DNA of 64,000 bases. It comes from Takakia lepidozioides (lineage: Eukaryota; Plantae; Bryophyta). A model generated the notes under the pieces. The model did not search any database. It had not been told where the DNA came from and saw nothing but the letters and a program-made list of their open reading frames with translations. Each line of letters opens with the position of its first letter. The first letter of the stretch is position 1. The position numbers and the translations under genes are program-made. Below are positions 11,515 to 37,331 of the stretch, one piece after another. Where the stretch lies: positions 23,312,001 through 23,376,000 of the forward strand of contig CM060733.1 of assembly GCA_030704615.1 (NCBI GenBank). Direction: 5' to 3'.

Positions 11515-12795
11515 GACAACAAGATGCGTCGCAAAGCTTTCTTGGAAATTGTCTCCCCTCTCTCGCAAGCACATTTTATTCAGCATAGGAACTAGTGTGT
11601 GATAGGTAGGGTTGGGGTGTTTGCTAGAACAAATCTAGGCTGTTATTGTCAGCTGCCAGCAGCAAGGCGAGGATCTACACATGATTTCTGCAGAGGCAGG
11701 GATAGCTGAAGGAGCAGGGATGGAATGTGGGTCCAGATTCATCCAAGAGGGCCAGATCTCCAGCACAAGAATACCTATGATTCCCTGTGGATTGATAGAA
11801 GCTTAACTGGAAGCGGCGGCGGCGGCGGCGGCACAATTGATAAAATCAGGCAATTCTGTGAGTTAGCTTGGTGGGTGCATCTATGGTGGTTTGGAGTGCT
11901 TTTGACATGTTACTGCCGATGTGGCAGCAGGAAAGTATCCAAAAACAGATGACACAGACGAGGAGAAGCTTTGCAATTAATGAAGACCCCAGTCAATGGT
12001 CGGACAATCGAGGCAAAAAGGTGAATGCCTGTTGGATTACAAAGAACACGATGTATCGCAAAGCTTTCTTGGAAATTGCCATCCCCTCTCTCCCAAGGAC
12101 ATTTTTGAAGTCTTGGGAGCAATTAGCGCAGGAACTAGTGTGTGATAAATAGGGTTATGGTGTTTGCTATAACACATCTAGGATGTCATTGTCAACTGCT
12201 ACCAACAAGGCAAAGATCTAGTGATCAAGTTAGCTCATTGGGTGGATCTATGGTGGTTTGGAGTGATTCTGACATGTTACTACCAATGTGGCAACAGGAG
12301 AGTATCCAAAAACAGATAACAGAGACGTGGAGAAACTTTGGAATGAATATTTTTCCAACCTCACTTAATGGTGGGACAATTGAGGAAAAAAGGCGAATGC
12401 CTGTTAGATTGCAGAGAGAAGCAGACAACAAGATGCAACGCAAAGCTTCGTTGGAAAATTTCATCCTCTCTCTCCCTAGCACATTTTTAAAGTCTTGGGA
12501 GCAACTCCACATAGGAACTAGTTTGTAATGAGTAGGCTTGGGGTGTTTACTAGAACAAATCTAGGCTGTCGTTGTCAGCTGCCAGCAGCAAGGCGAGGAT
12601 CTATACATGATTTGTGCAGAGGCAGGGATAGCCGAAGGAGCAGGGATAGAGTGTGGGTCCAGATTCATCCAAGAGGCCCGGATTTCAAGCACAAAGTTAC
12701 ATATGAATCCCTGTGGATCGACAGCTACAAGAAACCTGCATGGATGGATGGTCAACTGGAAGCAGCAGCGGTGTCGGCACAGTTGATAAAATCAG
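11515..12795 (+). repeat. Degenerate tandem triplication upstream of and overlapping the PPR 5' end
   Basis: Motif (ag)atg...cgcaaagctt..ttggaaa.t...ctctctc...acatttt...ggaactagt recurs at about 11521, 12050 and 12431. Segment 11588-11850 is homologous to 12514-12797. Confidence 0.85.
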
Positions 12796-15284
12796 GCACC
12801 TCCACCATGACCACAACTTTCAAACGAGGACCAAGAGAGGGAGTCAACAATGCCTCTTCTGGCACTTCTGGGCATGTGAGGATGCTATGTGAGGCAGGGC
12901 GACTGAAAGAGGCTCTACAGGCTTTAAACCAAGGAGGCATTTCAGCAGATTCAGATACTTATGTCTGTCTCTTGCATGAGTGCATCAAGATGAAGGGCCT
13001 GGGAGCTGGAAAGCAGGTGCACGCTCACATTCTCCAAAGTGGATTCAAGCCAAACGTTTTTCTACACAACACCCTTGTCAACATGTATGTTAAGTGCGGG
13101 AGCATCGTGGATGCTCACCAAGTGTTCGACAGAATGCCCCAACGATGGTTGATCACGTGGAATATAATGATGGCAGGATTTACCAAGCATGGGTGTGGTA
13201 GGAATGCTTTGGAGACATATGAGCAAATGATGGAGGAAGGGGTGAAGCCCAACCACATCACGTTCATTTGCGTCTGCAATGCATGTGCGAGCCTGGCAGC
13301 GCTGGAAAAGGGTAAAGAGGTCCACAGTGATATCATCAAAGCTGGAATTGTGCCAGATGTCATTCTGAACACTGCCCTGGTGGACATGTATGCCAAATGC
13401 GGGAGCATTAAAGATGCAAGGATAGTGTTTGACCATATGGCTGAACTAAATGTGGTGTCATGGAACGCTATGATCACAGGATATGCACAGCAGAGGCGTG
13501 GGATGGAGGCTTTGGAGACCTATGAGCGTATGGTGGAGGAAGGGGTGAAGCCCAACCTCATCACATTTGTTTGTATTTGCAATGCATGTGCAGGCCTGGC
13601 AGCGCTAGAAAAGGGTAAAGAGGTCCATGGTGACATCATCAAAGCTGGAATTGTACCAGATGTTGTTCTGAACACTGCTCTGATGAACATGTATGCCAAA
13701 TGTGGGAGCATTAAGGATGCAAAGGGAGTGTTCGACCATATAACCAAACGAGATGTGGTGTCATGGAATGCAATGATTGCAGGATATGCTCAGCTTGGGT
13801 GCGGGATGGAGGCTTTGGAGACCTATGAGCAAATGATTCAGGAAGGGGTGATTCTGGACCGGGTCACGTTTGTTTGCATTTGCAATGCATGTGCGAGTCT
13901 GGCAGCCCTGGAAAAGGGCAAAGAGGTCCATGGTGACATCTGCAAAGCTGGAATTGTACCAGATGTTGTTCTGAACACTGCTCTGATGAACATGTATGCC
14001 AAATGTGGGAGCATCGAGGATGCAAAGAAAGTGTTCGACAATATGGCTGAACGAAACGTGGTGTCATGGAACACAATGATCGCAGGATATGCTCAGCATG
14101 GGTGCGGGAGGGAGGCTTTGGAGACCTATGAGCAAATGATGCGTGAGGGGGTGAAGCCCGACCACATCACATTTGTTTGTGTTTGCAATGCGTGTGCGAG
14201 CCTTGCAGCCCTGGAAAAGGGCAAAGAGGTGCATGGTGACATCATCAAAGCTGGAATTGTACCAGATGTCATTCTGAACACTGCCCTGGTGGACATGTAT
14301 GCCAAATGCGGCAACATTGAAGATGCAGAGGGAGTGTTCGACAATATGGCTGAACGAAATGTGGTGTCAGGAAACGTGATGATCGCCGGATATGCCCAGC
14401 ATGGTTATGATATTGAGGCCCTGCAACTATTGGAAGAATTGCAGGCGGAAGGCTTGAAGCTGAACAGTGTCACTTTTCTATGTGTTCTCTCTGCATGTAG
14501 CCATGCTGGCCTAGTGGATGAAGGCAATTACTACTTTGACTCCCTCAGTCAACATCATGGTGTCACTCCAGCACTGCAGCACTTTGGCTCCATGGTGGAC
14601 CTTCTTGGCCGTGCGGGGCGATTGGATGAGGCAGAAGACTTCATTAACAAAATGCCAATGAAACCAAATTCTGTGGTGTGGATGGCCTTGCTTGGTGCCT
14701 GCAGAATCCACGGCAATGTGGAGATAGCTGAACGTGCGGCAACATCTATTCTCAAGTGGGATGCAGAGGATGCTGCAACTTATGTGTTGCTCTCAAACAT
14801 CTATGCCGCAGCTGGAAAATGGGATGACAGTGCAAAGGTGAGAAAAATGATGAAGGTCAGAGGGGTTAGAAAGGATCCAGGTCGCTGTTGCATTGAGGTT
14901 GGCAACAAGGTGCACACCTTTGTTGTAGATGACAAATTTCATCCCAAAATTAAGGAAATCCATGCTAAGCTGAGAAGATTGTATGGGCAGATGAAAGAGG
15001 CAGGGTATGTGCCTGACACGCGCTTTGTATTGCATGATGAGGGGGAGGAGCAAAAGGAATTTTCTCTTTGCCACCACAGTGAGAAGCTGGCCATCGGTTT
15101 TGGGCTGATCAGCACGGCCCCTAGGACGCCTCTCCGTCTCATCAAGAATCTTCGGGTGTGTGGTGACTGCCACACCTCCATCAAGTTCATTTCAAAGATT
15201 GTTGGCCGAGCAATTGTTGTACGGGACGCAAACCGCTTTCACCACTTTGAAGATGGGGTTTGTTCTTGTGGGGATTACTGGTGA
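12528..15284 (+). CDS. PLS-class PPR protein with E1/E2/DYW domains (organellar C-to-U RNA editing factor), intronless
   Basis: 918-aa ORF with about 17 P/L/S motifs, a PG box (KDPGRCCIEV), deaminase motifs HSEKLA and LRVCGDCH, and the C-terminus CSCGDYW. The true start could be a later ATG (12741 or 12807). Confidence 0.97.
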   Translation: MSRLGVFTRTNLGCRCQLPAARRGSIHDLCRGRDSRRSRDRVWVQIHPRGPDFKHKVTYESLWIDSYKKPAWMDGQLEAAAVSAQLIKSGTSTMTTTFKRGPREGVNNASSGTSGHVRMLCEAGRLKEALQALNQGGISADSDTYVCLLHECIKMKGLGAGKQVHAHILQSGFKPNVFLHNTLVNMYVKCGSIVDAHQVFDRMPQRWLITWNIMMAGFTKHGCGRNALETYEQMMEEGVKPNHITFICVCNACASLAALEKGKEVHSDIIKAGIVPDVILNTALVDMYAKCGSIKDARIVFDHMAELNVVSWNAMITGYAQQRRGMEALETYERMVEEGVKPNLITFVCICNACAGLAALEKGKEVHGDIIKAGIVPDVVLNTALMNMYAKCGSIKDAKGVFDHITKRDVVSWNAMIAGYAQLGCGMEALETYEQMIQEGVILDRVTFVCICNACASLAALEKGKEVHGDICKAGIVPDVVLNTALMNMYAKCGSIEDAKKVFDNMAERNVVSWNTMIAGYAQHGCGREALETYEQMMREGVKPDHITFVCVCNACASLAALEKGKEVHGDIIKAGIVPDVILNTALVDMYAKCGNIEDAEGVFDNMAERNVVSGNVMIAGYAQHGYDIEALQLLEELQAEGLKLNSVTFLCVLSACSHAGLVDEGNYYFDSLSQHHGVTPALQHFGSMVDLLGRAGRLDEAEDFINKMPMKPNSVVWMALLGACRIHGNVEIAERAATSILKWDAEDAATYVLLSNIYAAAGKWDDSAKVRKMMKVRGVRKDPGRCCIEVGNKVHTFVVDDKFHPKIKEIHAKLRRLYGQMKEAGYVPDTRFVLHDEGEEQKEFSLCHHSEKLAIGFGLISTAPRTPLRLIKNLRVCGDCHTSIKFISKIVGRAIVVRDANRFHHFEDGVCSCGDYW

Positions 15285-17263: not shown

Positions 17264-19337
17264 TCAAAAAGGGTCATCATCAAGTACATCAAGTACATCA
17301 AGCTCCCCAAACATCATGTCATCCCAATCCTCCATGTCAGCCTCCCACATCTCCTCATAGTCATCGTAATCATCACCCCAGTCTTCACCATCATCAGAGT
17401 CATCATCCATGACTTCCTCCCAGTCCATGGGTGAGTGAAGGACTCGCAATTTCTTCACCTGCTCACCGAGAGCCCCTTGGAATCTGAGATGCCAACACGC
17501 TTTCACATCCAGGACCTCAAGATTAGGACAGCCCTTGAAAATGGCAATCAAGCCCTCGTCGGTAAGCAGATTATATGCAATACTGAGGTGCGTAAGGTGA
17601 GGCATGTTGTGTGCGATAGCCAGGGCATCGTCATTGCATTCTGGCAGAAGGTACAAGCGTCTGCCCAGTGGCCCTGAGCTGCAATCCAGACGTTTCAGGC
17701 ACTGACAGTGTCGCCCAATTTCTCTTATTGCCCCTTGCTTTAGGTTCATGCAACAGCTGATGTCCAGGTGCACAAGCGCGGTCAGCTTCGGTGCCATGTC
17801 CATCATGCATGCCTCTGAGACCATACTCTTGGTTATGCACAGCTTCTGCAACACACCCTCCCCACTGCACCAGTGCCATAACACATGCGTCATATTCAAT
17901 ACTAATGATTATCAGATTACACTGTGCATGTATAGGTGTGTGTATATGTTGCATCCTGCTATCCTGAACACAGATGTGAGAGAAGTGGCCGTGGTGGTAC
18001 TGCCCGTTGGACAGAGGACATAAAAGAGACATGGAGGAAAAGGGAAGGAAAAAGGGCAGGGCTCTGGGAAAACCAGGGAGGATGATGTCCTACAAGACTA
18101 GACCATTGGGAGACGGAAGGTTAGAACAATCTCTGCAACCAACCAGGGATGCTGCTGGTCAGCCAATCCACTACACATCCTTTCGATTACACAGTGAAAA
18201 TGTCACAAAGGATGGGAGGAGTGACATTGACATAACTAGTACCAGGTGGAGCACACTCTCAAAAAGAGAGCTGGATGGAAATCTGAGATATTATAGAACA
18301 AAACTAACAGACCCACTATCCAAAAGTTGATGGCTCGGCCCATTTCCATAGATACTTCCCCCAAAACCAGGCTGCATTTCTCCACGTCAAGAATTAACAA
18401 AGAGATGGTGGAAATCAACTAGCTGCTACCATGGTGTTCACCCTACAGTGAAATCCTTCAAATCACAACCGTTCACGACTCTCACAGCTTGCGAAGGTTA
18501 AAAGGCTTCTGTAAACATCTCGCCCCACTACACGCAATGCCAATAAGAAGGGTGTCTGTACTTTACGGCTGTCTGTCAACATTGGCTTTGAGGCACCTTT
18601 GAGGGCGGCACCCTCCTTTCTGCATACTCATACTCCCACAGCCAGGGGCGAGGTTGTAAAATGACATTCACTGCGTATGTCATTCCACAGCCAAGAAAAG
18701 ATGCTTTCAGGAAATAAGTGCGAATGAAAGGCCAGCTTAACATCCACTTGAAAAAATGAAGCTGTTATCCCAGCTCTGCTGCTATAACCCTCTCCCTAAA
18801 TGTGCCACATGCGGCTGTTGTTGAACTGGCACACACGATGTAGAGAACAGATAGACTCATATTCAATAGATGAAGTCAGATTGGCAACAATGTGCAATGC
18901 AGGCTTGACACCAGAATCAAAGTCTGTACGTCCACAATCCCAAGCCTTACACCACACCTCACATGTCAGTTGGGGCTATTCGAATATGCCGTCATCTACA
19001 TCAATAAGCTGTGTCAAGGCCAGGAAAGGAAGTAGGTTGAGCAAGTCTCTGACCTTTCAGCCACAAGGCGAAGGGAAGCATCGGTACACAAGGTGCAAGA
19101 AAAGCGTAGCAAACGGCCTTCTGCGCGCGGAAGCAAGTAGCTCAGCATGCGCTCAACCTCGTCAGAGGTCTTGGCCACGCTCCAGGAACCTAGGTCCAGG
19201 GTACGCCAACAGGGAGCGCTACACGAGACGCGCTTCCATGCCTTGCACACCAGCGGAATTGTAACGAGCATATCCTTCAATGGCAGCCTCTCAAACACTC
19301 CGACCATTGCTTCCGGCAGCATGTCGGCCCAATCCAT
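17264..19337 (-). CDS. F-box/LRR protein (FBW2/SKIP-like), two coding exons (19337-19054 and 17864-17264)
   Basis: F-box MDWADMLPEAMVGVFERLPLKDMLVTIPLVCKAW. Cysteine-containing LRRs (MPHLTHLSIAYNLLTDEGLIAIFKGCPNLEVLDVKAC) and an acidic tail. The GT-AG join keeps frame (AES|GEGVLQKL). Confidence 0.9.
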
Positions 19338-23914: not shown

Positions 23915-26267
23915 CGCTGCGCCCTTCTTGCCCCACACCGGAGGTGTTGCAAAATCCCTGCAGCCAGGCTCGCCTCTTTGAGTAAGACGCCTTCAACACT
24001 GAGCCTCTCTTCGTTAGATGACTTGCAGACCCAATTAGGGTTACGCCACACTTTTCCCCCTGAATTTAGGTTCAAAGCCTTTCATTGAACCATCATATCA
24101 ATTACACATTCATTCCTTTGAAACAGGAAACAGGACAGTCATGTAAGCCCCATCAGCTGTGGCCTGCTAATGCAGCAGCCATGGAAGAGATCAACAGAAC
24201 CCAAATAGATTGTAGCTCTATTTTGAATCCTTGGGACAAGAGCTTGCTTTCAGCACCTGATGCCTCTAGTTTTCAAAAGAATGGTTTTCCTCTTTCACAG
24301 GGGGATAACTTCACAGGGCAAGTGAGGTAAAGAAAACTTCTACTTCTAAAGAACACCGGTGCTTGGACAGAAAACTCTTGGGATCAGTATGTTTCCAGCA
24401 GTGAGTTCCAGTCTTCATGATCAAAGGTGCCAGGCTCTTAACATGACTGGTGCTTTGACAAGATGTTTACACCTGAGTACAAAGAATCCAGTCGTGAAGA
24501 GTTGAAGATTTAAAGTAGATTTGGTGCAGAGTTGTGAATACCAGCATAACCTCTGGTGGTTCCAAGAGTTCTTGAAACATATTTACATAAATGACCAACT
24601 TTAACATCCATGGTTGCGCAGAAATCCGAGTAACATATTTCTCATGTACAATTGGGTAGTGATCATGACATGATTTGTGTTTTCTTAGATTGAGGGCTAA
24701 GTTATTGGAGATTGATCCAAAACTTGGACCGCCCTTCTCACTACACTCAGCATCGTAAGCTCCCCCTGCCACCCACTATTATAGTCCCAGAGATTCCCTT
24801 CATGGCATCCACACTAGTAAACCATGAGTGAACTAATCATAAGGATTTCATAAGGAAAATAACGTAAGAATGGACTCTGCTCAACTTCAGGCATGTAAAC
24901 CTCCATACATCAGCACACTGAAATTTTGGTGCCACTTTAGATATGCAATCCCCAACCCTGTTTGCTCTTGAGGTATCAGACTCACTCTTTGCACAGATTA
25001 TGCTACATTACACAATCACTAACAGTGCACAGTGATCCTACAGTTAGAAGTGAATATAGAATGATCATAGATGTCTAAGATCCAGTGACAGAACAGAGTT
25101 TGCAGATTACCCTTATGTGTCAACAAAAAATATGGTGAAGGTTTGAAATTACTCCTCAAACTTGATAGTCTACTGATTTTGCCATGGGTGATTACACTTC
25201 TGTACTCCTGCTTGGGAGCCCCTTCACTTAAAATCATAACTGCGAGGAAAGAACTGAAATTGGGACGGACTACATCAATGCAAACTCTGTACTTACAAAT
25301 GAACTTTTCTCACCAAACATCGCTGGCCAAAAACTATATTCGCGCCAACTGGAAAATCTTTCAGTCTACAACAATCAACAGGTTGGGTCAGAATAGCAGC
25401 TCAAACTCTTTCGATGCACTGATGTTGAAATAGATGGTGAAATCTATGGTGCACACACATGAATTCACACGAGTTTGGAATAGAGACTTTACTGTACCAA
25501 AACTTGTTTGTCCATGGTACCGAGTGAATCTAGATACCCAGACTAGCACATATACAGTTTCTTTCCAAGAATATATGCGAACATTTATTAGGAAAAAATT
25601 ACCACCAAAGGAATAAGCATTGGAAGGGAAGTGGCCAATGACATGGGTGGCACTCTGTCACTTTCTAACCTGCTCTCACTATTTTGAGCCAAGCCTGTGA
25701 TTGTGATGATAGAAGACTGTAAACCAACTCTTTACCAGGTTCTACAATCATAATATAACACTCTACAGCTGTAGGATCCAATTCACAGGTGAATATCAGT
25801 TTAACTTCCCAAACAATATGGAGACGATAGACTGAGCGTAGAAAGCAATAGGAGCTGGGAGATAAACTGGGGATGGTTGGCGCTGATAGCAAGCAGGGAT
25901 CGATAGGTCATGTGAAATGATGCATCATATGACCAGAAACTGAGATTTGCTGGATGCTGGAACTCAAGTTCCCAAATCTGTAGACCTGTACATCTTTGTA
26001 ACTGTAAATCTTGCAGACAGCAGATACCATCTCTAGGGCATTTTCTTCCACTAAACCCAGAGTCAGCCCTCCTGCTTTGGTTCAGTGAAAGTGAAGCACA
26101 CTTACAGGACCTACTGATGCCCGCTGACTCAAGCGGCCATGCCCACGGAATTAGGGTGCAAAAGTAGGGGACAGGAAATTGCACCCACTCTCTCTCTCTC
26201 TCTTTCTCCTCATTCCTTCTCAAGCCACAATGAACAGTCCCCCAATAGGCACTAGTCTTATCACTTT

Positions 26268-27815
26268 TCACAGCTTGAGGCGATCACTGGGATAGATAAG
26301 ATCTGGGTTGGCGATTCCAGGATTGCTTTGGACCAGTTCCTGCCAACTAGATTTCCCGGCACGTCGGGAGATGAGGGACAAAGTATCCCCCTCTTTAACC
26401 TGGTACACTGGTGAGTTCGCCCTGATGCTTATTGCCACCAATGTGCCTACAAACACCACGACTCCTGCTACCACTGGCAACCATGGCAGGCCTCGCTTCC
26501 TGCCCCTCTCTTTATTCAACTTATCTTCTGGAGCCTTGCTTTGCTGCAATCTGTTCTGCGCATCTCTTCCTGAAGTCGTCTTTCTCTGTTCACTAACAGG
26601 AGCAGAGACTGTGCCTTGAGGTTCCCTTCCAAATGTTGTTCTAGGTGGGTCAGAGAGAGGTGTATAAATTTTGGAGGGTTTCCCGGCCGTGGCGGATCTT
26701 GTGCTTCTAGGCTCCTCTCTTGATGAAGATTTCGCCTTTTCATTCGGAGCCATAGGGATGCTTGAAGGTTCACTGACAAAGTCACGGCTCTTATCCAACT
26801 TGTCCTGCATCCTCCCAAGTTCCACCACAGCACTTTCAGGTTCGACAGTTGCCGCCTTTTCACTCTCTTCGGGAAGATTCACAGAGACCCCAGGGGGCTT
26901 GATTGGAGGACCCCCCAGCAAACCATTAACAACTTCAGCATTCTGTGCCCCATTTTGTGTCCCATTTCTCGCCAGACCTGTGCCTTGAGGCTGGGTTGCC
27001 GACGTGTGCACGGTCGCTTCAGGACTATGCGTGGAATTATCGGAAGGCTTACTGGGAGTGTCTTTATCACTAACAGGCCCGTCCCCAGATGCCTGCAAGC
27101 CATTGAGTACATCAGTATCGACTGCCTCGTCTTGTGGCCTCCCACTTTCTGGGACTGCACTTGCAAGCTGAGTTTCTGATGCCTCTTTACGCAGTTCAGC
27201 TATACTTGATGATGTCTCCTTACCCAGTTCCGCTAGATTCGTGTAAGACTTGGAAGAAGGCTTGCTGGCAGACTGTAGCAGGGACTCACGGAGACCACCG
27301 ACTAATTCATGAGGCATGGCATGCTTGTGCGTGGGCGTTGCCAGTGTGTGAGTAACATCATCAAAATCAGGTACTGGAAGCTGTTGCGCCCGAGCTTTTT
27401 TGGACAGCCGACGAATGCATACACATACTCTTCGTATATCCTTCTTTTCCACCGCATCAGGAGGAGTCAGAAGGTCCACGTCCCTCAAACCTACGTCCTT
27501 GCAAACCTTCAAAAAGGCCTCAATATTTGTGTACGGTACGTACCTGCTGCCTATCTTGCCTCTTATTCCAATGTCGGGAGATACAAGCTTTGGAGACGCT
27601 GTTTCATCGCCAAGTCTCCTCCGCATTAGCTCTTTCATGAGCTGTGCGACTCGATACAAAATGGCGCCATCCGCAAGCAAATCCACAAGACTGGCTCGCG
27701 AATCCATCATCTTTTCCCCAAGCGTGGCCTCCAACCATGTCCTAGCTTGCTTCTGAAGAAACTCATCATCTGAGTCTCTGAAGGACATGCTCGGCGACAG
27801 CCCTGTTTCAGCCAT
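26268..27815 (-). CDS. Intronless calponin-homology domain + disordered linker + single TM helix + C-terminal LysM protein
   Basis: 515-aa ORF. CH signature at about aa 18-143 (ARTWLEATLG..LVDLLADGAILYRVA..NIEAFLKVCKDVGLRDVDLLTPPDAVEKKDIRRVCVCIRRLS). Hydrophobic LPWLPVVAGVVVFVGTLVAISI at about aa 443-464. LysM YQVKEGDTLSLISRR..WQELVQSNPGIANPDLIYPSDRLKL at about aa 470-515. Confidence 0.92.
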   Translation of the reverse strand: MAETGLSPSMSFRDSDDEFLQKQARTWLEATLGEKMMDSRASLVDLLADGAILYRVAQLMKELMRRRLGDETASPKLVSPDIGIRGKIGSRYVPYTNIEAFLKVCKDVGLRDVDLLTPPDAVEKKDIRRVCVCIRRLSKKARAQQLPVPDFDDVTHTLATPTHKHAMPHELVGGLRESLLQSASKPSSKSYTNLAELGKETSSSIAELRKEASETQLASAVPESGRPQDEAVDTDVLNGLQASGDGPVSDKDTPSKPSDNSTHSPEATVHTSATQPQGTGLARNGTQNGAQNAEVVNGLLGGPPIKPPGVSVNLPEESEKAATVEPESAVVELGRMQDKLDKSRDFVSEPSSIPMAPNEKAKSSSREEPRSTRSATAGKPSKIYTPLSDPPRTTFGREPQGTVSAPVSEQRKTTSGRDAQNRLQQSKAPEDKLNKERGRKRGLPWLPVVAGVVVFVGTLVAISIRANSPVYQVKEGDTLSLISRRAGKSSWQELVQSNPGIANPDLIYPSDRLKL

Positions 27816-28453
27816 CCTGGCCTCCCCCTCTCTTTTCCACAGCAGCTACACACCTACTCAAGAAACCTCTGAACGCATTTTTTGGTACCTGAAGGCCCCC
27901 CTGTACCCCTTCTTTGACAGCCAAACCAAGTGCCTCAAACACAGTAGAACCTCGAATCAAGCTCACCGTGCCTGCTCGTCCCCAAATACCCTCAGACCTT
28001 CACACAACACTCCACCGGTATACTCGTACACTCTTCAACACTCCCTTCACTCCTTTCACAAAATCTGCACAAAAATGCAGCTGCTGCTCCTCTCACCTCA
28101 GCCTAACCGCCTGAACGTCAATGAAGCTGCAAGCAGAGCCCTAGAAGCAGAGCGAGCGAGGTTGCATAGCGGCCTGCAACAACACAAGCTGTTGACCACA
28201 AAAGGCAAATCCAATCCCGAGGAAGCTCCAGAGTGTGTGTGTCAGCGCAGAGCTATCAGGAGCGGGAGCAGCCCCTGTGCGACGGCGATGGCCCACCTTG
28301 CTCTGCTCTCCACTCCATCCCCGCCCGGGCAAGCCAGCACCAATAGAAACCCCGCTCTCGCCCTTCCCGCGCTTCAATACTTCCACTCTCTTGGACCTCC
28401 ATGCGGACAAACTACAGTACAATATAGATTATCCTGCAACGAAACTGGCACCA

Positions 28454-28524
28454 GTCGGTAGATCAGTTGGATGGAGCACTGAGTGCCACTCAGGTGGTTC
28501 TGGGATCAAATCCTTCTAACCGCT
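28454..28524 (+). other. Degenerate tRNA-like sequence (SINE head or tRNA pseudogene)
   Basis: A-box-like ggtagatcagttgg, stem ctgag-tgcca-ctcag and degenerate B box gggatcaaatcc. The acceptor stem is poor. Confidence 0.4.
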
Positions 28525-29436
28525 GGGCGCCTCATGGCGAGCTTACTATGAAGGAGGTTATTTTCTCCTCTCACTGTAATTAAGGGGCCTGATTTATGGG
28601 CGATCGCTCCCAGGTCTGTTTCCCTTTAAAATTTAAAATTTATAAAGATAAAAAACAAAAAAAACAAAACCGTGCAACCTGATGTACTTTCACGGAATTC
28701 AGGCAGCGTGGCCGGGCCCATACCAAATCCTTCTTATTACCTCGGATTGATTTTAAATACATCGGAATGCAAAGAGGTTGTCCAAAAGCAGAGAGTGAGT
28801 AGGCTAGTGAGTAAGGGGCCAGGTTGGAAAGGGGGGTGTGTGGGGATTAGAGAGTGGTCCAGGAATTATGAAGCGGGAGTTATAGTAAGGCCCCGGCCGC
28901 ACCTGGCTGCTAAGCTAGGTACCAGCCGTTAACGGCGTGGTGACGGCCGCACTTGCCCGTTACAACCCCCGCTAGTTAGCGGGCTCCTAGCTGCTGTTAA
29001 AGCTGACGGGGTTCTTCCGAAATTTAGCACGTCCTCCCCCAAGGTGGTAAATCGCGGTCACCGACTAAAAATCGGGCAGTCGGTCTTGCGCGCAACAGAG
29101 GTATGCAGCGACTCCCCTTCCCTGCGATCTCTCCCTTTCTCCGTCCCTGCCCCTCTTCCCTCTCTCTCTGCCTCCCTCTCTGCCTCCCTCTCTTTCATCA
29201 TCTCTCGCAATCCATCTCCTTCTATTCTTGTTCTTTCTTGTTTTTTGTTTTTGTTTTTGGTTGTTTGTGTATTCATGGGGTGGGTGACTGCACAGCAAGG
29301 AGCGCGGAGCGGGCGCGAGCAAGTCACCGGCGACCGCAGCTCAGTCAATGCAACCGTTCGCAATTCAGTGAGTGCCATTTACATAGTGCTTTGTGCTTTC
29401 CACATGGAGTGCTTTGTGGCTGGTGCAATGGGTTTA

Positions 29437-30000
29437 GGGGGTACAGGCACAATTCCCTTGATAGAATTGAAGAGAGTGTCTCTTTGGTGAGAGAACCCCG
29501 GACAGTGTATCAGAAAATGAATACTGTCTTCAGATTGCCCACACAACGGACAATTGCATTCTCTCTTTCCTCTCTGCTTCTGTTTGTTGTTCAAAGATAG
29601 GCTTCCTGCCCTGAGTTTAAATTTCAGTCTAGTGCCGAGAGTGGGTAGACCCTTGAGGTCATCCAAGATGTCCACCCCCATGTCACTGACTGGAAACAAG
29701 TTCAGGGAAGTTCTCTGCCTAACTTCATTTTCATCAGACAATCTCATGGCAACAGACATGGCTTCGGACACTACAGCCTCTAAGTCAGATTTATCCAGCA
29801 GGGTCAAGGCTTGCGGATCCAGGTCCAGGTCCTTGAGAATCTCTTCTACTCTCTTCTGCCAGGACTTAGCCTGTTTGACAGGGCGGTCCTGTTTCCAAGA
29901 TATGGAGTCGATTAACTTAGGATATCTGGTGTTGGGCATATGCTGCAGCTGACCCCACCATCTGACCTTGAATTCATCTAGTCGGGAGCTTAAGAGGTGC
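29437..30000 (-). pseudogene. LINE ORF2 C-terminal fragment (family B) inside the Harbinger
   Basis: DEFKVRWWGQLQHMPNTRYPK...[18 protein letters not shown] (CCHC), near-identical to 30753-31300 and 57963-58386. Confidence 0.88.
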
Positions 30001-30624
30001 AAGCATTATGAGCTCCCTCATCAATGTAGAGGGCTAGTTACCACAGATGTGATACGCAGTGATGTGGTCCTTTTCTGCAGTGCAGGGCCACAAATTGCCA
30101 GAAGATTTGAGCTGGGAAAAGACACATGTATTCATTGATCATCCCCTGCAAGTTTTGGCATAGTCCCCACAGGGTGTCAACCCCATTGGAGCCAGTTTGT
30201 AGCTACCAGGATCTGGAATTGCAGCCCGCCAAAGATATGGTGCTCGCACATCCAACAATGATCGGGATCCAGGGATTTAGAACTAAGGTGAAAAGCCAAT
30301 AGACATGATGTTGATTCCAGACATTGCTCTGGGCCCAATCCAACACAGATGCCACACGTGTGGCTGTGATTGCACTGCCTGACACACACTGCTTGAGAAA
30401 GGGCAGGGAAGAGCAGAGAGAGATAGCTCAACTGTAGACTTGATGGGAGGATACAACCCAGCATCCAGACCCAGGAGGGCCACAGCTTTCAGCATTGTCT
30501 CCAGCTTATATTAGTGAAGAAGTGTGTCGATGTTTGATTCTTTCAAAGACCTCTCCTTGAGCAGAGAACCAATTCCAATACATCAGAGCATATTTACCTC
30601 CCAAAGACCAGACCTGAGGCTCTT

Positions 30625-31750
30625 TTTCCAGATATCCTCTAGAAAACCCTTCACACAAGCATCAATCTGCTGTGTGTGATTTGCCCAAAAACTAGGCCTC
30701 AGGAGGGCCTGGGCCTTTGGCTCAGCCTCGAGATTTTCAAAGTTGGTAAACAGGGGTACAGGCACAATTCCCTTGATAGAATTGAAGAGAGCGTCTCTTT
30801 GGTGAGAGAACCCCGGACAGTGTATCAGAAAATGAATACTGTCTTCAGATTGCCCACACAGCGGACAATTGCACTCTCCCTTTCCTCTCTGCTTCTGTTT
30901 GTTATTCAAAGGTAGGCTTCCTGCCCTGAGTTTAAATTTCAGTCTAGTGCCGAGAGTGGGTAGACCCTTGAGGTCATCCAAGATGTCCACCCCTATGTCA
31001 CTGACTGGAAACAAGTTCAGGGAAGTTCTCTGCCTAATTTCATTTTCATCAGACAATCTCATGGCAACAGACATGGCTTCTGACACTACAGCCTCTAAGT
31101 CAGATTTATCCAGCAGGGTCAAGACTTGCGGATCCAGGTCCAGGTCCTTGAGAATCTTTTCTACTCTCTTCTGCCAGGACTTGACAGGGCGGTCCTGTTT
31201 CCAAGATATAGAGTCGATTAACTTAGGATATCTGGTGTTGGGCATATGTTGCAGCTGACCCCACCATCTGACCTTGAATTCATCTCGTCGGGAGCTTAAG
31301 GATTCTCCTCTGTCGTTGAATGCTACCACTGCACATTTGCTGACATTAGCCTCTAGCCCCCAAAGATCAAAGTATCTCTTCGCACAATCAATCAACTCCT
31401 GGAGATTGGTTGGAGTCTCCCCTATGCCTGCAAAGTCATCCGCAAACATAAGGGCTGGTATGGTGGTATCACCCACCCTTAACCCAAATCCTTCACTTTC
31501 CACATCCTCGAGGAGTTGATTGATGAAAACATTGAAGAGCAGAGGGGAGAGAGTACATCCTTGAGCTACACCTTGGTCTATGTCAAAGAAGTTGGACTTA
31601 TGTCCGTTAACAGTGACACAGCTTTTGGTGTGAGCATACAAGTTGTGGACAACTCTCCACATCTTTCCCTTGATCCCACAAGACCAGAGGCGGAACCATA
31701 GGCCATCTCTCCACACTGTGTCATAAGCCTTTTTGACATCCAGGAAAAAA
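30625..31750 (-). pseudogene. LINE reverse transcriptase + CCHC fragment (family B), internally deleted
   Basis: RT motifs FFLDVKKAYDTV, GVAQGCTLSPLLF and LMFADD. The sequence then jumps directly to the C-terminal region, with no YLG motif or thumb. Confidence 0.92.
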
Positions 31751-32718
31751 ACACATGAGTGTAAAAGAAACAGATGAGATGCATACATCAATTGGTCCTG
31801 GCCATACTGCCTCCTTTAAGTCATTGGGCCTACTGGAACAAACCCTCCAGAAGCTGTCATGGGTTTTTGACCCATAACAAAGCCCGAAATGGCCATAGCA
31901 ATAGCAGAGGCAGCCACTAACTACCAAGGATTCGGTCACAGTTGCCATAAGGGCTGGTGCAGCACCATAGCAGGAAGCTTGATGTTGACACCTAGAAAGA
32001 GACACATTAGACAAACATGCAACCACAGAGAGGGATTTATCTCTACCACCAGGCTGAGCTCTAGCCTGAAATCTCTATAGAACTTATGCAATCAACAACT
32101 ATTGGGTTGGGTTACATGGGAGTTAATAGTTGATGTAGGACTGGTGTGAAGATTATGTAGAAATGATGAGGCTCATTACAGCACCACTACTCTAGAACCC
32201 ATAATTTTCCACTCCCTGTCTCCAAGCAGTTGCAGGTTTGGCTTCTTAGGAGAATTTGGAATCTTTCAGCCTAATGCTCTTCAGGATTTCTATGGCATTA
32301 GTCTCATATTACACCAGGGCCACTCCACTAGCCACGACCCCAAAAACCAGTAAAGTTGATCTAGGGTCTCGCCCCTTCTTTTGTAGGACAGGGCAGAGGA
32401 TGGAGTGGAAGGCCGAGATGTCTAAAGTATTGGTGTGTTCTTGCTATGAAGTGCATTGAAGGTGGTGTAGTGGATAGATGTAGAGGTTGGTTAACAATTC
32501 TTTCCAGTGCATGAAGGTTGGAACTTCCTTGAATGAGCTGTCTGGCTGCAGGAATGCTGGAGGAGCTCCAGGAGCATGTGGAGTCCATTGGCATGGCAAA
32601 TGGTATACATGATTAAGTTTCCAAGGCCTCTTTGGCTCACGGTCTTTTGAACATCTATGTGAGGAGTATATGTTTGGAAGCTGAAAGTGGGGGGTTGGGG
32701 GGCGCAACAAAGTCCACC

Positions 32719-33702
32719 ATGTCTGCATCCACAACATCTAACAGCACCGGCAGTGGCCATGTGAGCTCCAAAAAGCGAGCCAGAGACAAGAACTGGACGG
32801 CTATGGAGGTACATGTGTTAGTTGTCGCAAAGCGCCATGAGTGGGAGGCTTGGAAGGCCTCCAATGCGCGTGGCAACATGATGTGCGACAAGGTAAAATG
32901 GGAGAGGGTAGTTGAAGTGTTGGAATCGCAGGGTGTGAGCGGGCGGGACGTTGCTGGGTGCACCACCAAGTGGCAGCATTTGTGCAAGCAGTACAAAGAC
33001 ATCCGGGGGCACCAACTCAATGCCACCGGCAACCAGGACTACTTCACAATGAGTTCTGATGAGCGCGTGGCGTTGGGACTTCCGAAGTCCTTTGCCAGGG
33101 ACCTCTTTGAGGACATGAACTTCCTGGCTGAGCGTGCGTGCAACGCTCCCAAACTGACATCAGTGAGCTTGAGGATAACACCAATTGTTGCTCCTTTGCC
33201 CCCTGTAGACATAGATACATCGTTGCCTCATATGGAAGAGGAAGTACTACCCTATGCTAATAATGAGGCTGCACCTGCTCTACCATCATTGGATGGGGTG
33301 GCCCATGTGCGGGTAGAGCATGATGAGGCGCCGATTCTTGCACGGGGTCGGCCTCCAGTGATGGGCCGGGAGAGGTATACCAACACCTCTCCCACACCCT
33401 TTACCAATTCGACAGGTAAGAAAAAGAAGGGAAGCACAACCAGTGCCGATCTACTCAAGGCCTTCAAGGAAGGGAATGAAGGTTTGTTAAAAAATATGGA
33501 GGAGGATAGGAAGGAGAGAATGGACAGGTTTGCCAAATCTTTTCAACTTCAAGATGACATCTTTAAATTTGAGGTTGAAAAAGCTAGAGCAACCTTAGCT
33601 ACAGAGCAGGCAGCTTCAGGTAACCAGCGCACCATGGTGTCGCATTTTGGAAAGCTCGTTGAGCATTTTGGAAAGCTAGTTGAGAAGAAAGATGACGCCT
33701 AG
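32719..33702 (+). CDS. Harbinger ORF1, Myb/SANT-like (trihelix) DNA-binding protein
   Basis: Open ORF with RARDKNWTAMEVHVLV...KWERVVEVLESQGVSGRDVAGCTTKWQHLCKQYKDI, NLS-like KKKK and a C-terminal coiled coil. It lies inside the Harbinger TIRs. Confidence 0.88.
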   Translation: MSASTTSNSTGSGHVSSKKRARDKNWTAMEVHVLVVAKRHEWEAWKASNARGNMMCDKVKWERVVEVLESQGVSGRDVAGCTTKWQHLCKQYKDIRGHQLNATGNQDYFTMSSDERVALGLPKSFARDLFEDMNFLAERACNAPKLTSVSLRITPIVAPLPPVDIDTSLPHMEEEVLPYANNEAAPALPSLDGVAHVRVEHDEAPILARGRPPVMGRERYTNTSPTPFTNSTGKKKKGSTTSADLLKAFKEGNEGLLKNMEEDRKERMDRFAKSFQLQDDIFKFEVEKARATLATEQAASGNQRTMVSHFGKLVEHFGKLVEKKDDA

Positions 33703-35977: not shown

Positions 35978-37331
35978 TCATGTGTTGATGACGTGGTTGC
36001 ACAATATCGCCCTCAAATCAGCACCAACTGTATGGCCCCTATTGACAACTGGTTCTTGACTGTGGGCAACTCGATCACGCTCCATGATGGCTGCCATGGC
36101 ATCCATCTCATTGTAGATGCCCTCAAAGTCAACTTCCTTGAAATCAACCAAAAGATTATATAGGATGCAACAGGCATGAATAACCTGGGGCAAGAAATCA
36201 ATGTCGAGTTCGCTCCTCCAACCCACCTCTTTGAAGGTACCTTTCATTCGACCAAAGGCAATCTCCGAGAAAATTCTTGCCTTTGACAATTGGTGATTGA
36301 AGACGGTTTTGGCTCTGGAGAGGACTGGAGCATTGGGAGCTCTTTTGTAACTAGGGATGAGCCAGGGGAGGGCAGGGTAGACTGCATCACCAATAAGGAG
36401 TGGTGGGATCTCGTGTCCATTGTCAAGAATGACATTCTCACCACGCAAAAGAGTGCCCTGTGACGCAGGATAGAAAAGGGGGGAGTTCCGTAACACCCTA
36501 GAGTCGTTCATACTGCCGGGCTCTCCAACATAGATATCCACAAACTTTGCATCTGGATCCACGACCCCTTGTAGAACCATTGAATAGTAACCATTTCTGT
36601 TCCTGTAATCAAATTTGATGTCATTGTTGGGGGGCCTTGATTCTGATCTGTGTACAATCAATTGCACCGACAACATTCGGAATCCCTGATCTCTTCTCGT
36701 TTTCAAGCATCGATTTCTTGAGAGTCTCACCTCCTTGCCACTGTAGGTGGTGACCCAGGACAGAGATAATGGCAGGGACCACTTGTCGCAAAAGCTCATA
36801 CAGAGTTGAACGACCAATTCCAAAAGCCTCGGTAATTTCTATTGTTGTGGCTGCCCACAGTAGTTTATAAAGCACTGCCCCTACTCTCATCGGTACAGGT
36901 AAGCTCCTCCGGTACCTAGTATCCTGCATCTATATAACCGGTGCAAGGGCATTGCACAACCAATCGAATGTGCCTGCACTCATCTTCATAATCTGCAGCC
37001 ATCTCTCGTCATCATATTGCAAAAGAAAGTCCTCAAACCAAGCTCTCGATCTGTGCTTGACCCACATCCCTAAAGACACACCACCTCTTGGCTTGTAGTT
37101 CCTAATGGTCCAGAACTGGCGCTGCAAAAAACTCCTACATGCAAGGAGTAACATATCTAGATCGTCCTCCTTGGCTAGGTCAATATCATGACGAAGCAGA
37201 GTCGGTCGTGCCTCTTGTGGGCGTCTCATCCCAAACAACTCTGGAGCCTGATCGAGCATGAACTGTATAAAGACAAGAATCTCTCCCATGGCAATAGCCA
37301 ATTCGTTTGTCATATTGAAGTCTGAACTCAA
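35978..37331 (-). pseudogene. Harbinger DDE transposase (HARBI1/DDE_Tnp_4-like), disrupted
   Basis: HTH region (ITEAFGIGRST) and catalytic motifs VGAIDCT, LIGDAVYP and FSEIAFGRMKG, plus ACCILYN. In-frame TAG at 36930-36932 and a frameshift in the homopolymer run near 36629-36634. Confidence 0.93.

What the first reader, a model, noticed from the sequence alone, without database searches (positions are those of the whole stretch)
26268..27815. CH-TM-LysM protein: candidate membrane-spanning tether between the cytoskeleton and peptidoglycan or chitin
Seen: a single-exon 515-aa protein with an N-terminal calponin-homology domain, about 300 aa of S/P/T/E-rich linker, a basic patch (KERGRKRG) directly before one TM helix, and a terminal LysM ending NPDLIYPSDRLKL. 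It has no signal or transit peptide. Established: CH domains bind F-actin or microtubules; LysM binds GlcNAc polymers; the positive-inside rule puts CH in the cytosol and LysM across the membrane; moss plastids retain peptidoglycan between the envelope membranes; known plant LysM receptors have N-terminal LysMs with a kinase or GPI anchor, the opposite topology. Inference: this is a nesprin-like bridge. It could anchor the plastid peptidoglycan wall to actin for plastid positioning or division, or it could couple chitin/peptidoglycan recognition at the plasma membrane directly to actin without a kinase. I know of no characterised protein with this architecture.
Basis: partly seen in the sequence, partly recalled or inferred. 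Interest (0 to 1): 0.9.

Follow-up and report, generated by a model that had tools for sequence, protein, structure and literature searches.

The report
Tail-anchored actin-binding LysM membrane tether
This moss-like plant gene encodes a membrane protein with a probable actin-binding domain in the cytosol and a peptidoglycan/chitin-binding LysM domain across the membrane; it is the intact ancestral form of the flowering-plant OPAQUE10 family, and it may link chloroplast wall remnants to the cytoskeleton, though that is unproven.

Summary
An uninterrupted 515-aa ORF on the minus strand (26268-27815) encodes five parts:
- a type-3 calponin-homology (CH) domain, seen by family profile and fold but not by Pfam on this sequence
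- a ~250-aa disordered linker
- a basic patch
- one TM helix
- a Pfam-significant C-terminal LysM starting 5 residues after the membrane

It is not an orphan. The CH-TM-LysM family runs from Zygnematophyceae through liverworts, mosses, lycophytes and ferns to conifers; a Chlorokybus member has CH and a LysM-like end but no TM. Its angiosperm branch is OPAQUE10, whose only functional paper is retracted and noticed neither CH nor LysM.

On the angiosperm stem the LysM decayed into a basic ~50-aa tail that keeps only the last-strand motif (hhalign 95%).

The tether reading is partly supported. LysM retention tracks lineages with documented plastid peptidoglycan, and the angiosperm anchors look like organelle outer-membrane anchors. 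There are counter-examples:
- the LysM is degenerate or truncated in Physcomitrium and Ceratodon
- Asparagus lacks it
- some algal forms have a LysM with no TM

Localisation and ligands are untested. Plastid outer envelope about 0.35-0.4; ER, nuclear envelope or plasma membrane is nearly as likely.

The parts
26268..27815 (-). Complete single-exon CDS, 515 aa plus TGA stop (26268-26270)
   Evidence: Collinear from N- to C-terminus with homologs (alignments A1 and A3).
27381..27782 (-). Type-3 calponin-homology domain, aa 12-145, with a poorly conserved loop at aa 72-92. Family-invariant residues include Y92, P94, Y95, R128, C131, C133.
   Evidence: Mapping to GAS2 actin contacts and PMC12084551.
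27267..27380 (-). Conserved post-CH segment, aa 146-183: the VPDFD motif and a helix at 169-183. Conserved from mosses to angiosperms.
26514..27266 (-). Disordered S/P/T/E-rich linker, aa 184-434, variable in length and sequence across the family. Contains a moss-conserved short motif, KETSSSIAELRK, at aa 199-210 (27186-27221).
26490..26513 (-). Basic juxtamembrane patch KERGRKRG, aa 435-442
   Evidence: A basic N-flank is present family-wide (median 4 K/R in the 10 aa before the TMD).
26424..26489 (-). Single transmembrane helix, aa 443-464
   Evidence: Kyte-Doolittle 19-mer maximum 2.55 and the only hydrophobic segment. AF2 helix at 446-466. Wimley-White mean about 0.33.
26271..26408 (-). 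C-terminal LysM domain, aa 470-515, starting 5 residues after the TM
   Evidence: Pfam PF01476. Family LysM alignment A4 has 61% mean column identity. The profile hits bacterial peptidoglycan-associated LysMs and Ecp6. AF2 helices at 479-486 and 491-497.

Best explanation
SHOWN. The gene encodes a tail-anchor-type, single-pass membrane protein with these parts:
- a GAS2/IQGAP-like single CH3 domain at the N-terminus
- about 250 aa of disordered linker
- a basic patch
- one TM helix
- a 46-aa LysM that starts 5 residues beyond the membrane

It is the bryophyte member of an ancient streptophyte family. The angiosperm branch of that family is OPAQUE10, where the LysM has decayed to a basic tail that keeps only the terminal YPxEKLK(F/L) motif.

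INFERRED. There is no signal peptide and the only TM lies 51 aa from the end. The CH domain and linker therefore stay in the cytosol and the LysM lies on the far side of the membrane. The protein would work as a trans-membrane tether: the CH domain holds F-actin and the LysM holds a GlcNAc-containing polymer pressed against the opposite membrane face.

MOST LIKELY TARGET (inference, not shown). The membrane is the plastid outer envelope and the ligand is the plastid peptidoglycan layer in the intermembrane space. The far side would then work like a bacterial outer-membrane-to-wall anchor (Pal/OmpA logic), fused to an actin handle for plastid anchoring, positioning or division.

The CH-TM core also has a function that does not need the LysM, because the LysM was lost several times while the core stayed conserved.

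The confidence given (0.38) is for the whole statement including the plastid target. For the architecture and family assignment alone it is about 0.9; for 'cytoskeleton-to-far-side tether' about 0.55.
For: Architecture.

Family and OPAQUE10 link:
- the CH-domain tree mirrors the species tree, with the window protein sister to all sampled mosses (99/88), conifers plus Taxus at 98/96 and angiosperms at 100/100
- TM-LysM profile against angiosperm TM-tail profile: hhalign 95%, E 3.9e-8, 72 collinear columns

Actin:
- the top sequence and fold matches are GAS2 CH3 bound to F-actin, and IQGAP1/Rng2
- GAS2 F108 and R144, whose mutation lowers F-actin affinity (PMC12084551), align with the family-invariant Y92 and R128

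LysM type and constraint:
- 61% mean column identity from Chlorokybus to conifers
- the best PDB matches are bacterial wall-associated LysMs (6ve2, SafA, LytE, Kbp, LytN, MltD) and Ecp6, with no plant receptor LysM at E<=0.01

Phyletic pattern:
- Pfam-significant LysM in Closterium, Mesotaenium, Netrium and Riccia
- intact by the family LysM profile or alignment in Spirogloea, Sphagnum, Selaginella, Diphasiastrum, Psilotum, Adiantum, Ceratopteris and Picea
- absent in Amborella and in the 10 other named angiosperm members scanned or inspected; 179 of the 280 family proteins collected score below 5 bits on the family LysM profile
- plastid peptidoglycan, or a functional pathway for it, is documented in Closterium (PMC3398972), moss, lycophytes and ferns (PMC9434261) and spruce (PMC12681378), while many angiosperms lack core genes including PBP (PMC12681378)

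Anchor features:
- angiosperm members have a weakly hydrophobic TMD (Wimley-White median 0.16), at least 3 K/R in the 10 aa after the TMD in 80%, tail net charge +7 and tails 39% K/R/S/T
- these match published criteria for chloroplast outer-membrane anchors (PMC8836251)
Against: - No localisation, topology or binding experiment exists for any LysM-bearing member.
- The only experimental report on a family member (maize O10, PMC4991801) placed it at ER-associated vesicles and protein bodies. That paper is retracted (PMC9668117), and its leaf images describe 'unknown spherical vesicles' near the nucleus.
- The LysM is degenerate in Physcomitrium (Pfam 17 bits, below cut-off; GDTL changed to ADTL), cut by a stop codon in Ceratodon, and cut by an in-frame stop in a related moss. 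Physcomitrium is the model for plastid peptidoglycan.
- Asparagus, reported to keep the full toolkit (PMC10784329), has a LysM-less member. If the angiosperm ancestor kept the pathway, LysM decay preceded peptidoglycan loss.
- Chlorokybus and the long Closterium forms carry the LysM with no adjacent TM, so there it would be cytosolic.
- LysM-bearing TMDs are borderline to ER-like (Kyte-Doolittle median 2.2, Wimley-White median 0.41), and only 40% have at least 3 K/R after the TMD.
- A 51-aa tail with a folded domain is longer than classical tail anchors.
- The phyletic correlation rests essentially on one loss event on the angiosperm stem.
Confidence: 0.38

Rival explanations
1. ER or nuclear-envelope resident linker. 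The protein inserts into the ER as a type II or tail-anchored protein, so the LysM faces the ER lumen or perinuclear space and the CH domain ties ER or nuclear membranes to actin. This is a KASH-like logic without a KASH motif. The LysM ligand would be an N-glycan chitobiose core or a luminal protein.
For: - Hydrophobic TMD in LysM-bearing members (Kyte-Doolittle median 2.2; window 2.55) with a strongly basic N-terminal flank, which favours type II orientation.
- With 51 aa after the TMD, late co-translational recognition is possible (inference).
- The maize O10 report of ER and protein-body association depending on the C-terminal TMD (PMC4991801).
- Repeated LysM loss shows that the CH-TM core works without a glycan-binding end.
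Against: - The O10 paper is retracted with missing primary data.
- No GlcNAc polymer is known in the ER lumen.
- This model gives no reason why a LysM held at 61% column identity from algae to conifers should decay specifically on the angiosperm stem.
- The C-terminus ends DRLKL, not the plant KASH-type xVPT or PPPx motif.
- Angiosperm tails are strongly basic (+7) with weakly hydrophobic TMDs, which is not typical of ER tail anchors (PMC8836251, PMC2854689).
Confidence: 0.27
2. Plasma-membrane sensor or anchor. After ER insertion the protein travels to the plasma membrane. The LysM then faces the apoplast and binds chitin or peptidoglycan fragments (or a wall glycan), while the CH domain couples that site directly to cortical actin with no kinase.
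For: - N-in/C-out topology and a TMD of 21-23 residues.
- The LysM profile also matches the chitin-binding fungal Ecp6.
- Tail-anchored proteins such as syntaxins reach the plasma membrane (general knowledge).
Against: - One LysM held 5 residues from the membrane is poorly placed to meet ligands beyond the cell wall, and single LysMs bind weakly (general knowledge).
- Chitin and peptidoglycan perception persists in angiosperms through LysM receptor kinases, so the angiosperm-stem decay is unexplained.
- The family is present in algae such as Mesotaenium and Closterium, and a Chlorokybus member has no TM.
- There is no signal peptide and none of the cysteine pairs typical of extracellular plant LysMs.
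Confidence: 0.1
3. The LysM is not a glycan receptor here. The essential unit would be CH plus a membrane anchor on some organelle, and the LysM, or just its terminal YPxEKLK(F/L) strand, is a protein-protein docking or targeting element.
For: - The terminal motif survives in 129 of 179 LysM-less members after the fold has decayed, and tail length stays near 50 aa.
- The LysM was lost independently in a fern paralog, in a moss subclade and in angiosperms.
- TM-less algal forms place the LysM in the cytosol.
Against: - Canonical LysM core residues (GDTL, I, N, NP, P) are invariant or nearly so across LysM-bearing members over very long evolutionary distances.
- Pfam scores are well above threshold, as expected for a folded, ligand-binding LysM.
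Confidence: 0.15

Closest known systems
OPAQUE10 (maize O10) and the angiosperm 'CH domain-containing / OPAQUE10-like' proteins
   Same: Homologous throughout:
- N-terminal CH domain and post-CH helix (47-50% identity in the CH region)
- basic patch, single C-terminal TM and a ~50-aa tail with the terminal YPxEKLK motif (hhalign 95%)
   Different: - The window protein keeps an intact LysM. Angiosperm members have none.
- It lacks the cereal-specific repeats.
- The O10 paper called the protein cereal-specific and its TMD of independent origin, and mentions neither CH nor LysM. That paper is retracted.
Nesprin / KASH-domain LINC-complex proteins
   Same: The layout and logic match: an actin-binding CH module, a long linker, one TM near the C-terminus, and a short far-side domain that grips a structure across the membrane.
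   Different: - A single type-3 CH instead of a CH1-CH2 pair.
- A disordered linker instead of spectrin repeats.
- The C-terminus is a LysM ending DRLKL, not a KASH peptide (PPPx, or plant xVPT).
- The partner would be a glycan, not a SUN protein.
- There is no sequence homology outside the CH fold.
CHUP1 (chloroplast unusual positioning 1)
   Same: The proposed role is the same: a plastid outer-envelope protein linking the organelle to actin.
   Different: CHUP1 is anchored by an N-terminal hydrophobic segment, binds actin through a non-CH region, and has no intermembrane-space domain. The window protein has no N-terminal hydrophobic segment.
Bacterial envelope-to-wall anchors (Pal, OmpA, Lpp; LysM proteins such as TsaP, MltD, LytE, SafA)
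   Same: A membrane-attached domain binds peptidoglycan lying directly under the membrane. The family LysM profile matches these LysMs best.
   Different: This is a eukaryotic nuclear gene, and the other end is a cytoskeletal CH domain on the opposite side of the membrane. Peptidoglycan binding is not shown.
Plant LysM receptors (CERK1/LYK, LYR, LYM/LYP, CEBiP)
   Same: They contain LysM and bind chitin or peptidoglycan.
   Different: - The receptors have a signal peptide, three N-terminal disulfide-linked LysMs, and a kinase or GPI anchor.
- Here there is one C-terminal LysM, no signal peptide and the opposite topology.
- No receptor LysM structure was matched at E<=0.01.
GAS2 / IQGAP / Rng2 single CH3 domains
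   Same: They are the best sequence and fold matches. Two experimentally important GAS2 actin-contact positions (F108, R144) correspond to the invariant Y92 and R128.
   Different: - No GAR, IQ or GAP domains.
- The GAS2 E133 equivalent is not conserved.
- The N-terminal 'hook' (ABD1) could not be aligned.
- Single CH3 domains do not all bind actin (PMC12084551).

Membership tests
Calponin-homology domain (PF00307), type 3 | Significant match to the Pfam CH model | tested here: not met
   No hit on the window protein, even for aa 1-170 at E<=10. 8 of 18 family N-termini hit at E<=0.1, best 1.7e-9; several algal members exceed the cut-off.
Calponin-homology domain (PF00307), type 3 | Sequence-profile and fold similarity to solved CH domains | tested here: met
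   Family profile against PDB: GAS2 CH3 1.5e-11, IQGAP1/Rng2 about 1e-6, calponin 2.5e-4. AF2 model with core pLDDT above 80; the top 12 Foldseek hits are all single CH domains.
Calponin-homology domain (PF00307), type 3 | Binds F-actin (or microtubules) | not testable with these tools
   Only indirect evidence: GAS2 F108 and R144 align with the invariant Y92 and R128, while E133 is not conserved (PMC12084551).
LysM domain (PF01476) | Pfam match above the gathering threshold | tested here: met
   35.5 bits on the whole protein and 40.4 bits on the tail alone, against a cut-off of 20.9.
LysM domain (PF01476) | beta-alpha-alpha-beta fold | tested here: inconclusive
   The AF2 full-length model shows two helices (479-486, 491-497) flanked by single beta-bridge residues, at pLDDT of only 60-70.
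LysM domain (PF01476) | Binds GlcNAc-containing glycans (peptidoglycan or chitin) | not testable with these tools
   The profile matches bacterial wall-binding LysMs and Ecp6. No binding data exist.
Tail-anchored membrane proteins | No signal peptide, and a single TMD at the extreme C-terminus (classically no more than about 30-40 residues after it) | tested here: inconclusive
   There is a single TMD at aa 443-464 and no other hydrophobic segment. The tail is 51 aa (family median 54), longer than the classical limit, so late co-translational insertion cannot be excluded.
OPAQUE10 family (angiosperm CH-TM proteins) | Homologous CH N-terminus plus homologous C-terminal TM and tail | tested here: met
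   tree; hhalign 95% over TM and tail.
OPAQUE10 family (angiosperm CH-TM proteins) | Cereal-specific central repeats of O10 proper | tested here: not met
   The linker is non-repetitive, disordered and not alignable to angiosperm linkers. The window protein is a pre-angiosperm relative, not O10 in the strict sense.
KASH / nesprin LINC proteins | C-terminal KASH peptide (PPPx, or plant xVPT) after the TM; a CH1-CH2 pair; spectrin repeats | tested here: not met
   The C-terminus is a LysM ending DRLKL. There is a single CH3 and a disordered linker.
Plant LysM receptor kinases / receptor proteins | Signal peptide, three N-terminal LysMs, and a TM plus kinase or a GPI anchor | tested here: not met
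   One C-terminal LysM, no kinase and no N-terminal hydrophobic segment.
Chloroplast outer-envelope tail- or signal-anchored proteins | Moderately hydrophobic TMD (Wimley-White below about 0.4), at least 3 basic residues after the TMD, and an RK/ST-rich tail in a subset (PMC8836251) | tested here: inconclusive
   Window protein: Wimley-White about 0.33, but only 2 K/R in the 10 aa after the TMD. LysM-bearing members: median 0.41, and 40% have at least 3 K/R. Angiosperm members: 0.16, 80% and a 39% K/R/S/T tail, so they fit. The scale was my own rough implementation.

The most novel reading that the evidence does not exclude
The CH-TM-LysM family is a eukaryote-invented tether that spans the plastid outer envelope. 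Its LysM grips the relict cyanobacterial peptidoglycan wall in the intermembrane space, and its CH domain grips cytosolic actin. This would be the first physical link between a host cytoskeleton and an organelle's bacterial wall. Its LysM decayed when flowering plants stopped depending on that wall, leaving the OPAQUE10-type anchor.
Probability: 0.33. Interest if true: 0.9.

Novelty: new variant of a known kind. Interest (0 to 1): 0.72.

Why it matters
Plastid peptidoglycan in streptophyte algae, bryophytes, ferns and conifers is established, but no host protein is known to recognise it from the cytosolic side, and it is unclear how the wall connects to division or positioning machinery.

This family offers a conserved, single-copy-like and easily testable candidate: one small intronless gene with two separable domains.

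Whatever the membrane turns out to be, two results stand:
- The angiosperm OPAQUE10 family is redefined as an ancient CH-domain, C-terminally anchored protein whose tail is a decayed LysM. That contradicts the retracted description of it as a newly evolved, cereal-specific chimera.
- A LysM kept at 61% column identity from Chlorokybus to conifers decays on the angiosperm stem, which gives a dated evolutionary event to explain.

Tried and rejected
- Pfam CH on the window protein and on aa 1-170: no hit. The CH call had to be made by profile and fold.
- Exact look-ups of the window protein and of the neighbouring PPR protein: not in the collection. The organism could not be named; the tree only says it is sister to the sampled mosses.
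- tRNA and Rfam scans of the window: nothing.
- Literature searches for calponin plus LysM, CH plus outer envelope, and CH plus tail-anchored in plants found nothing on this family. The CH/chloroplast hits concern the KIS1 kinesin.
- The maize O10 localisation data were considered but down-weighted, because the paper is retracted with primary data missing.
- KASH/nesprin, plant LysM receptor and CHUP1 membership: rejected on defining features.
- The positive-inside rule as the basis for topology: set aside, because both TM flanks are basic across the family. The topology argument now rests on the missing signal peptide and the C-terminal TM position.
- No dedicated TM, signal-peptide or localisation predictor was available. 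Hydropathy and charge were computed by script.
- No spliced model was needed (single exon), no contig looked human, and no protein read through a stop codon was passed to any tool. The two broken moss LysMs were read from the DNA only.
Full report
OBSERVATION

Pfam finds a LysM at aa 471-514, scoring 35.5 bits against a cut-off of 20.9, and 40.4 bits when the tail is scanned alone.

Pfam does not find a CH domain in this sequence, even at E<=10 on aa 1-170. The CH call is nevertheless correct:
- The protein matches the solved GAS2 CH3 domain by phmmer (E 4.5e-4).
- A profile of 18 family N-termini hits GAS2 CH3 at 1.5e-11, IQGAP1/Rng2 at about 1e-6 and calponin at 2.5e-4.
- 8 of 18 family N-termini hit Pfam CH at E<=0.1, best 1.7e-9.
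- An AlphaFold model of the domain (core pLDDT 80-93) retrieves GAS2-CH3 on F-actin, IQGAP1, Rng2, calponin and transgelin as its best PDB neighbours.

The rest of the protein:
- A conserved segment follows the CH domain, with a VPDFD motif and a helix at 169-183.
- The linker (aa 184-434) is 251 aa, 41% S/P/T/E, and modelled as disordered.
- The KERGRKRG patch is at aa 435-442.
- The only hydrophobic segment in the protein is aa 443-464 (Kyte-Doolittle 2.55), modelled as a helix.
- The LysM starts 5 residues after that helix.

Nothing about this is chance: homologs reach E 2.4e-97.

SURROUNDINGS

The window is a land-plant nuclear region. It holds a single-exon PPR-DYW gene, a reverse-transcriptase fragment, and Harbinger-type Myb and DDE ORFs. 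There are no tRNA or Rfam hits.

THE FAMILY

Word-index and exhaustive profile searches recover a collinear family. Named members:
- Streptophyte algae: Chlorokybus, Closterium, Mesotaenium, Netrium, Spirogloea
- Liverwort: Riccia
- Mosses: Sphagnum, Ceratodon, Physcomitrium
- Lycophytes: Selaginella, Diphasiastrum
- Ferns: Psilotum, Adiantum, Ceratopteris, Pteridium
- Gymnosperms: Picea, Taxus
- Angiosperms: several hundred sequences

A maximum-likelihood tree of the CH domain mirrors the species tree. The window protein is sister to all sampled mosses (99/88) with Riccia outside, so the source is probably an early-diverging moss lineage (inference). Conifer-type sequences group with Taxus (98/96). 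Angiosperms form one clade (100/100) with Amborella basal.

The Sphagnum ortholog is also intronless. Many members come from transcript-like contigs or transcriptomes, so the family is expressed.

LINK TO OPAQUE10

Angiosperm members are annotated 'protein OPAQUE10(-like)' or 'CH domain-containing'.

The one functional paper (PMC4991801) made these claims:
- Maize O10 is a newly evolved, cereal-specific protein.
- Its N-terminal third is conserved in plants.
- It carries cereal-specific repeats.
- Its C-terminal TMD is needed for ER and protein-body localisation.

That paper never mentions calponin or LysM, and it regards the TMD as of separate origin. It was retracted in 2022 for figure problems and missing data (PMC9668117), so I use it only as weak evidence.

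My data show instead that the whole CH / basic patch / TM / ~50-aa tail layout is ancestral. None of ten angiosperm proteins has a Pfam LysM at E<=1. Their tails nevertheless keep the length (median 50 aa) and end in YPxEKLK(F/L), which is the last strand of the LysM. A profile of TM-LysM modules aligns end to end with a profile of angiosperm TM-tails: hhalign 95%, E 3.9e-8, 72 columns.

- 94 have an intact LysM.
- 179 have none.
- 7 are intermediate.

Amborella already has only the vestige while Picea is intact, so the decay maps to the angiosperm stem.

HOW IT PROBABLY WORKS

Shown: the domain order and its strong conservation. Mean column identity is 50% for the CH domain and 61% for the LysM from Chlorokybus to conifers, while the linker is free to vary.

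Inferred topology: with no signal peptide and the sole TM 51 aa from the end, the large N-terminal part must stay cytosolic and the LysM must lie on the far side.

Inferred actin binding: the nearest relatives are single CH3 domains that bind F-actin. GAS2 F108 and R144, whose mutation lowers actin affinity (PMC12084551), align with the family-invariant Y92 and R128. E133 has no conserved counterpart, and the N-terminal hook could not be aligned.

Inferred glycan binding: the LysM profile matches bacterial wall-associated LysMs (the 6ve2 LysM protein, SafA, LytE, Kbp, LytN, MltD) and fungal Ecp6. It matches no plant receptor LysM at E<=0.01.

Together these make a trans-membrane tether the most economical reading.

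WHICH MEMBRANE?

For the plastid outer envelope with peptidoglycan as the ligand:
- The LysM is intact in the lineages where plastid peptidoglycan or its full pathway is documented: Closterium (PMC3398972), moss, lycophytes and ferns (PMC9434261), and spruce (PMC12681378). It decays in angiosperms, many of which lack core genes including PBP (PMC12681378).
- Angiosperm anchors have weakly hydrophobic TMDs (Wimley-White median 0.16), at least 3 K/R after the TMD in 80%, a net tail charge of +7 and K/R/S/T-rich tails. These are the published hallmarks of chloroplast outer-membrane anchors (PMC8836251).
- A LysM 5 residues from the membrane is well placed for a wall lying directly under the outer envelope, as in bacterial Pal/OmpA-type anchoring.

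Against it:
- The LysM is degenerate in Physcomitrium (Pfam 17 bits), cut by a stop codon in Ceratodon, and cut by an in-frame stop in a related moss whose downstream frame still shows the remnant.
- A fern paralog also lost it.
- Asparagus, reported to have the full toolkit (PMC10784329), has no LysM. This implies the decay preceded pathway loss.
- Chlorokybus and the long Closterium forms have the LysM with no adjacent TM.
- LysM-bearing TMDs are borderline to ER-like (Kyte-Doolittle 2.2, Wimley-White 0.41).
- The retracted O10 work reported ER association.
- The correlation rests on essentially one event.

I put the plastid model at about 0.35-0.4, ER/nuclear envelope at about 0.27, plasma membrane at about 0.1, and a non-glycan docking role for the tail at about 0.15.

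COMPARISON WITH KNOWN SYSTEMS

- It works like a nesprin/KASH bridge but fails every KASH-defining feature.
- It would do CHUP1's job with an unrelated, inverted architecture.
- It is not a plant LysM receptor.
- By homology it is a pre-angiosperm member of the OPAQUE10 family, with the ancestral LysM intact.

No paper in the library describes a CH-LysM protein. Databases only auto-label members as 'LysM domain-containing' or 'CH domain-containing'.

VERDICT

The protein is a new variant of known kinds of membrane-cytoskeleton tether, and an uncharacterised ancient family. It comes with a concrete, testable and potentially important hypothesis, plus a solid by-product: OPAQUE10's tail is a decayed LysM and its N-terminus is a CH domain.

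Noticed in passing
window 12528-15284 (+): Single-exon 918-aa PPR protein with E, E+ and DYW deaminase domains, i.e. a typical organellar RNA-editing factor. Its exact sequence is not in the indexed collections.
   Followed up: partly
window 30583-31791 (-), 32632-33702 (+), 35978-36823 (-): Transposon remnants just upstream of the gene: a reverse-transcriptase ORF, and a Harbinger-like pair made of a Myb/SANT DNA-binding ORF and a DDE_Tnp_4 transposase ORF.
   Followed up: partly
window 17264-17899 (-): A 211-aa ORF with leucine-rich repeats of the F-box/FBD-associated type. Probably one exon or a fragment of an F-box-LRR gene.
   Followed up: no
window 26188-26203: A (CT)8 / (GA)8 microsatellite about 65 nt downstream of the stop codon, in the likely 3' UTR.
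   Followed up: no
window 27186-27221 (-), aa 199-210: A short motif, KETSSSIAELRK, inside the otherwise variable linker. It is conserved among mosses (alignment A1) and could be a phosphorylation or docking site.
   Followed up: no
window 26001-30000: Local GC content is 0.51, against 0.38-0.48 in the rest of the window. An antisense 224-aa ORF (27787-28461, +) overlapping the 5' end has no Pfam match and is probably spurious.
   Followed up: partly
L004 3730-3750 (Ceratodon purpureus CM026438.1); L005 2985-3060: Independent lesions of the LysM in two mosses. In Ceratodon a stop codon comes right after ...QKSY. In a related species an in-frame TGA follows ...TWQEL, and the LysM remnant is still readable downstream. 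The Physcomitrium copy (P0200) is full length but substituted at core LysM positions.
   Followed up: yes
P0204 (1676 aa), P0142, P0177, P0187: Some angiosperm entries fuse a protein-kinase domain upstream of the OPAQUE10-like CH domain, or are named MAPKKK. These are probably merged neighbouring gene models rather than a real architecture.
   Followed up: partly
P0262 (Chlorokybus), P0255 and P0273 (Closterium): Deep-branching or long algal members carry the family LysM with no adjacent TM helix, and in Closterium only a partial CH match. Either the ancestral protein was soluble or these gene models are imperfect.
   Followed up: partly
P0015, P0023, P0076, P0077, P0079 (unnamed moss transcripts): One moss paralog clade has a 40-60-aa insert between the TM and the LysM that is basic at first and then Ser/Asp-rich. 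The insert lengthens the far-side tether.
   Followed up: no
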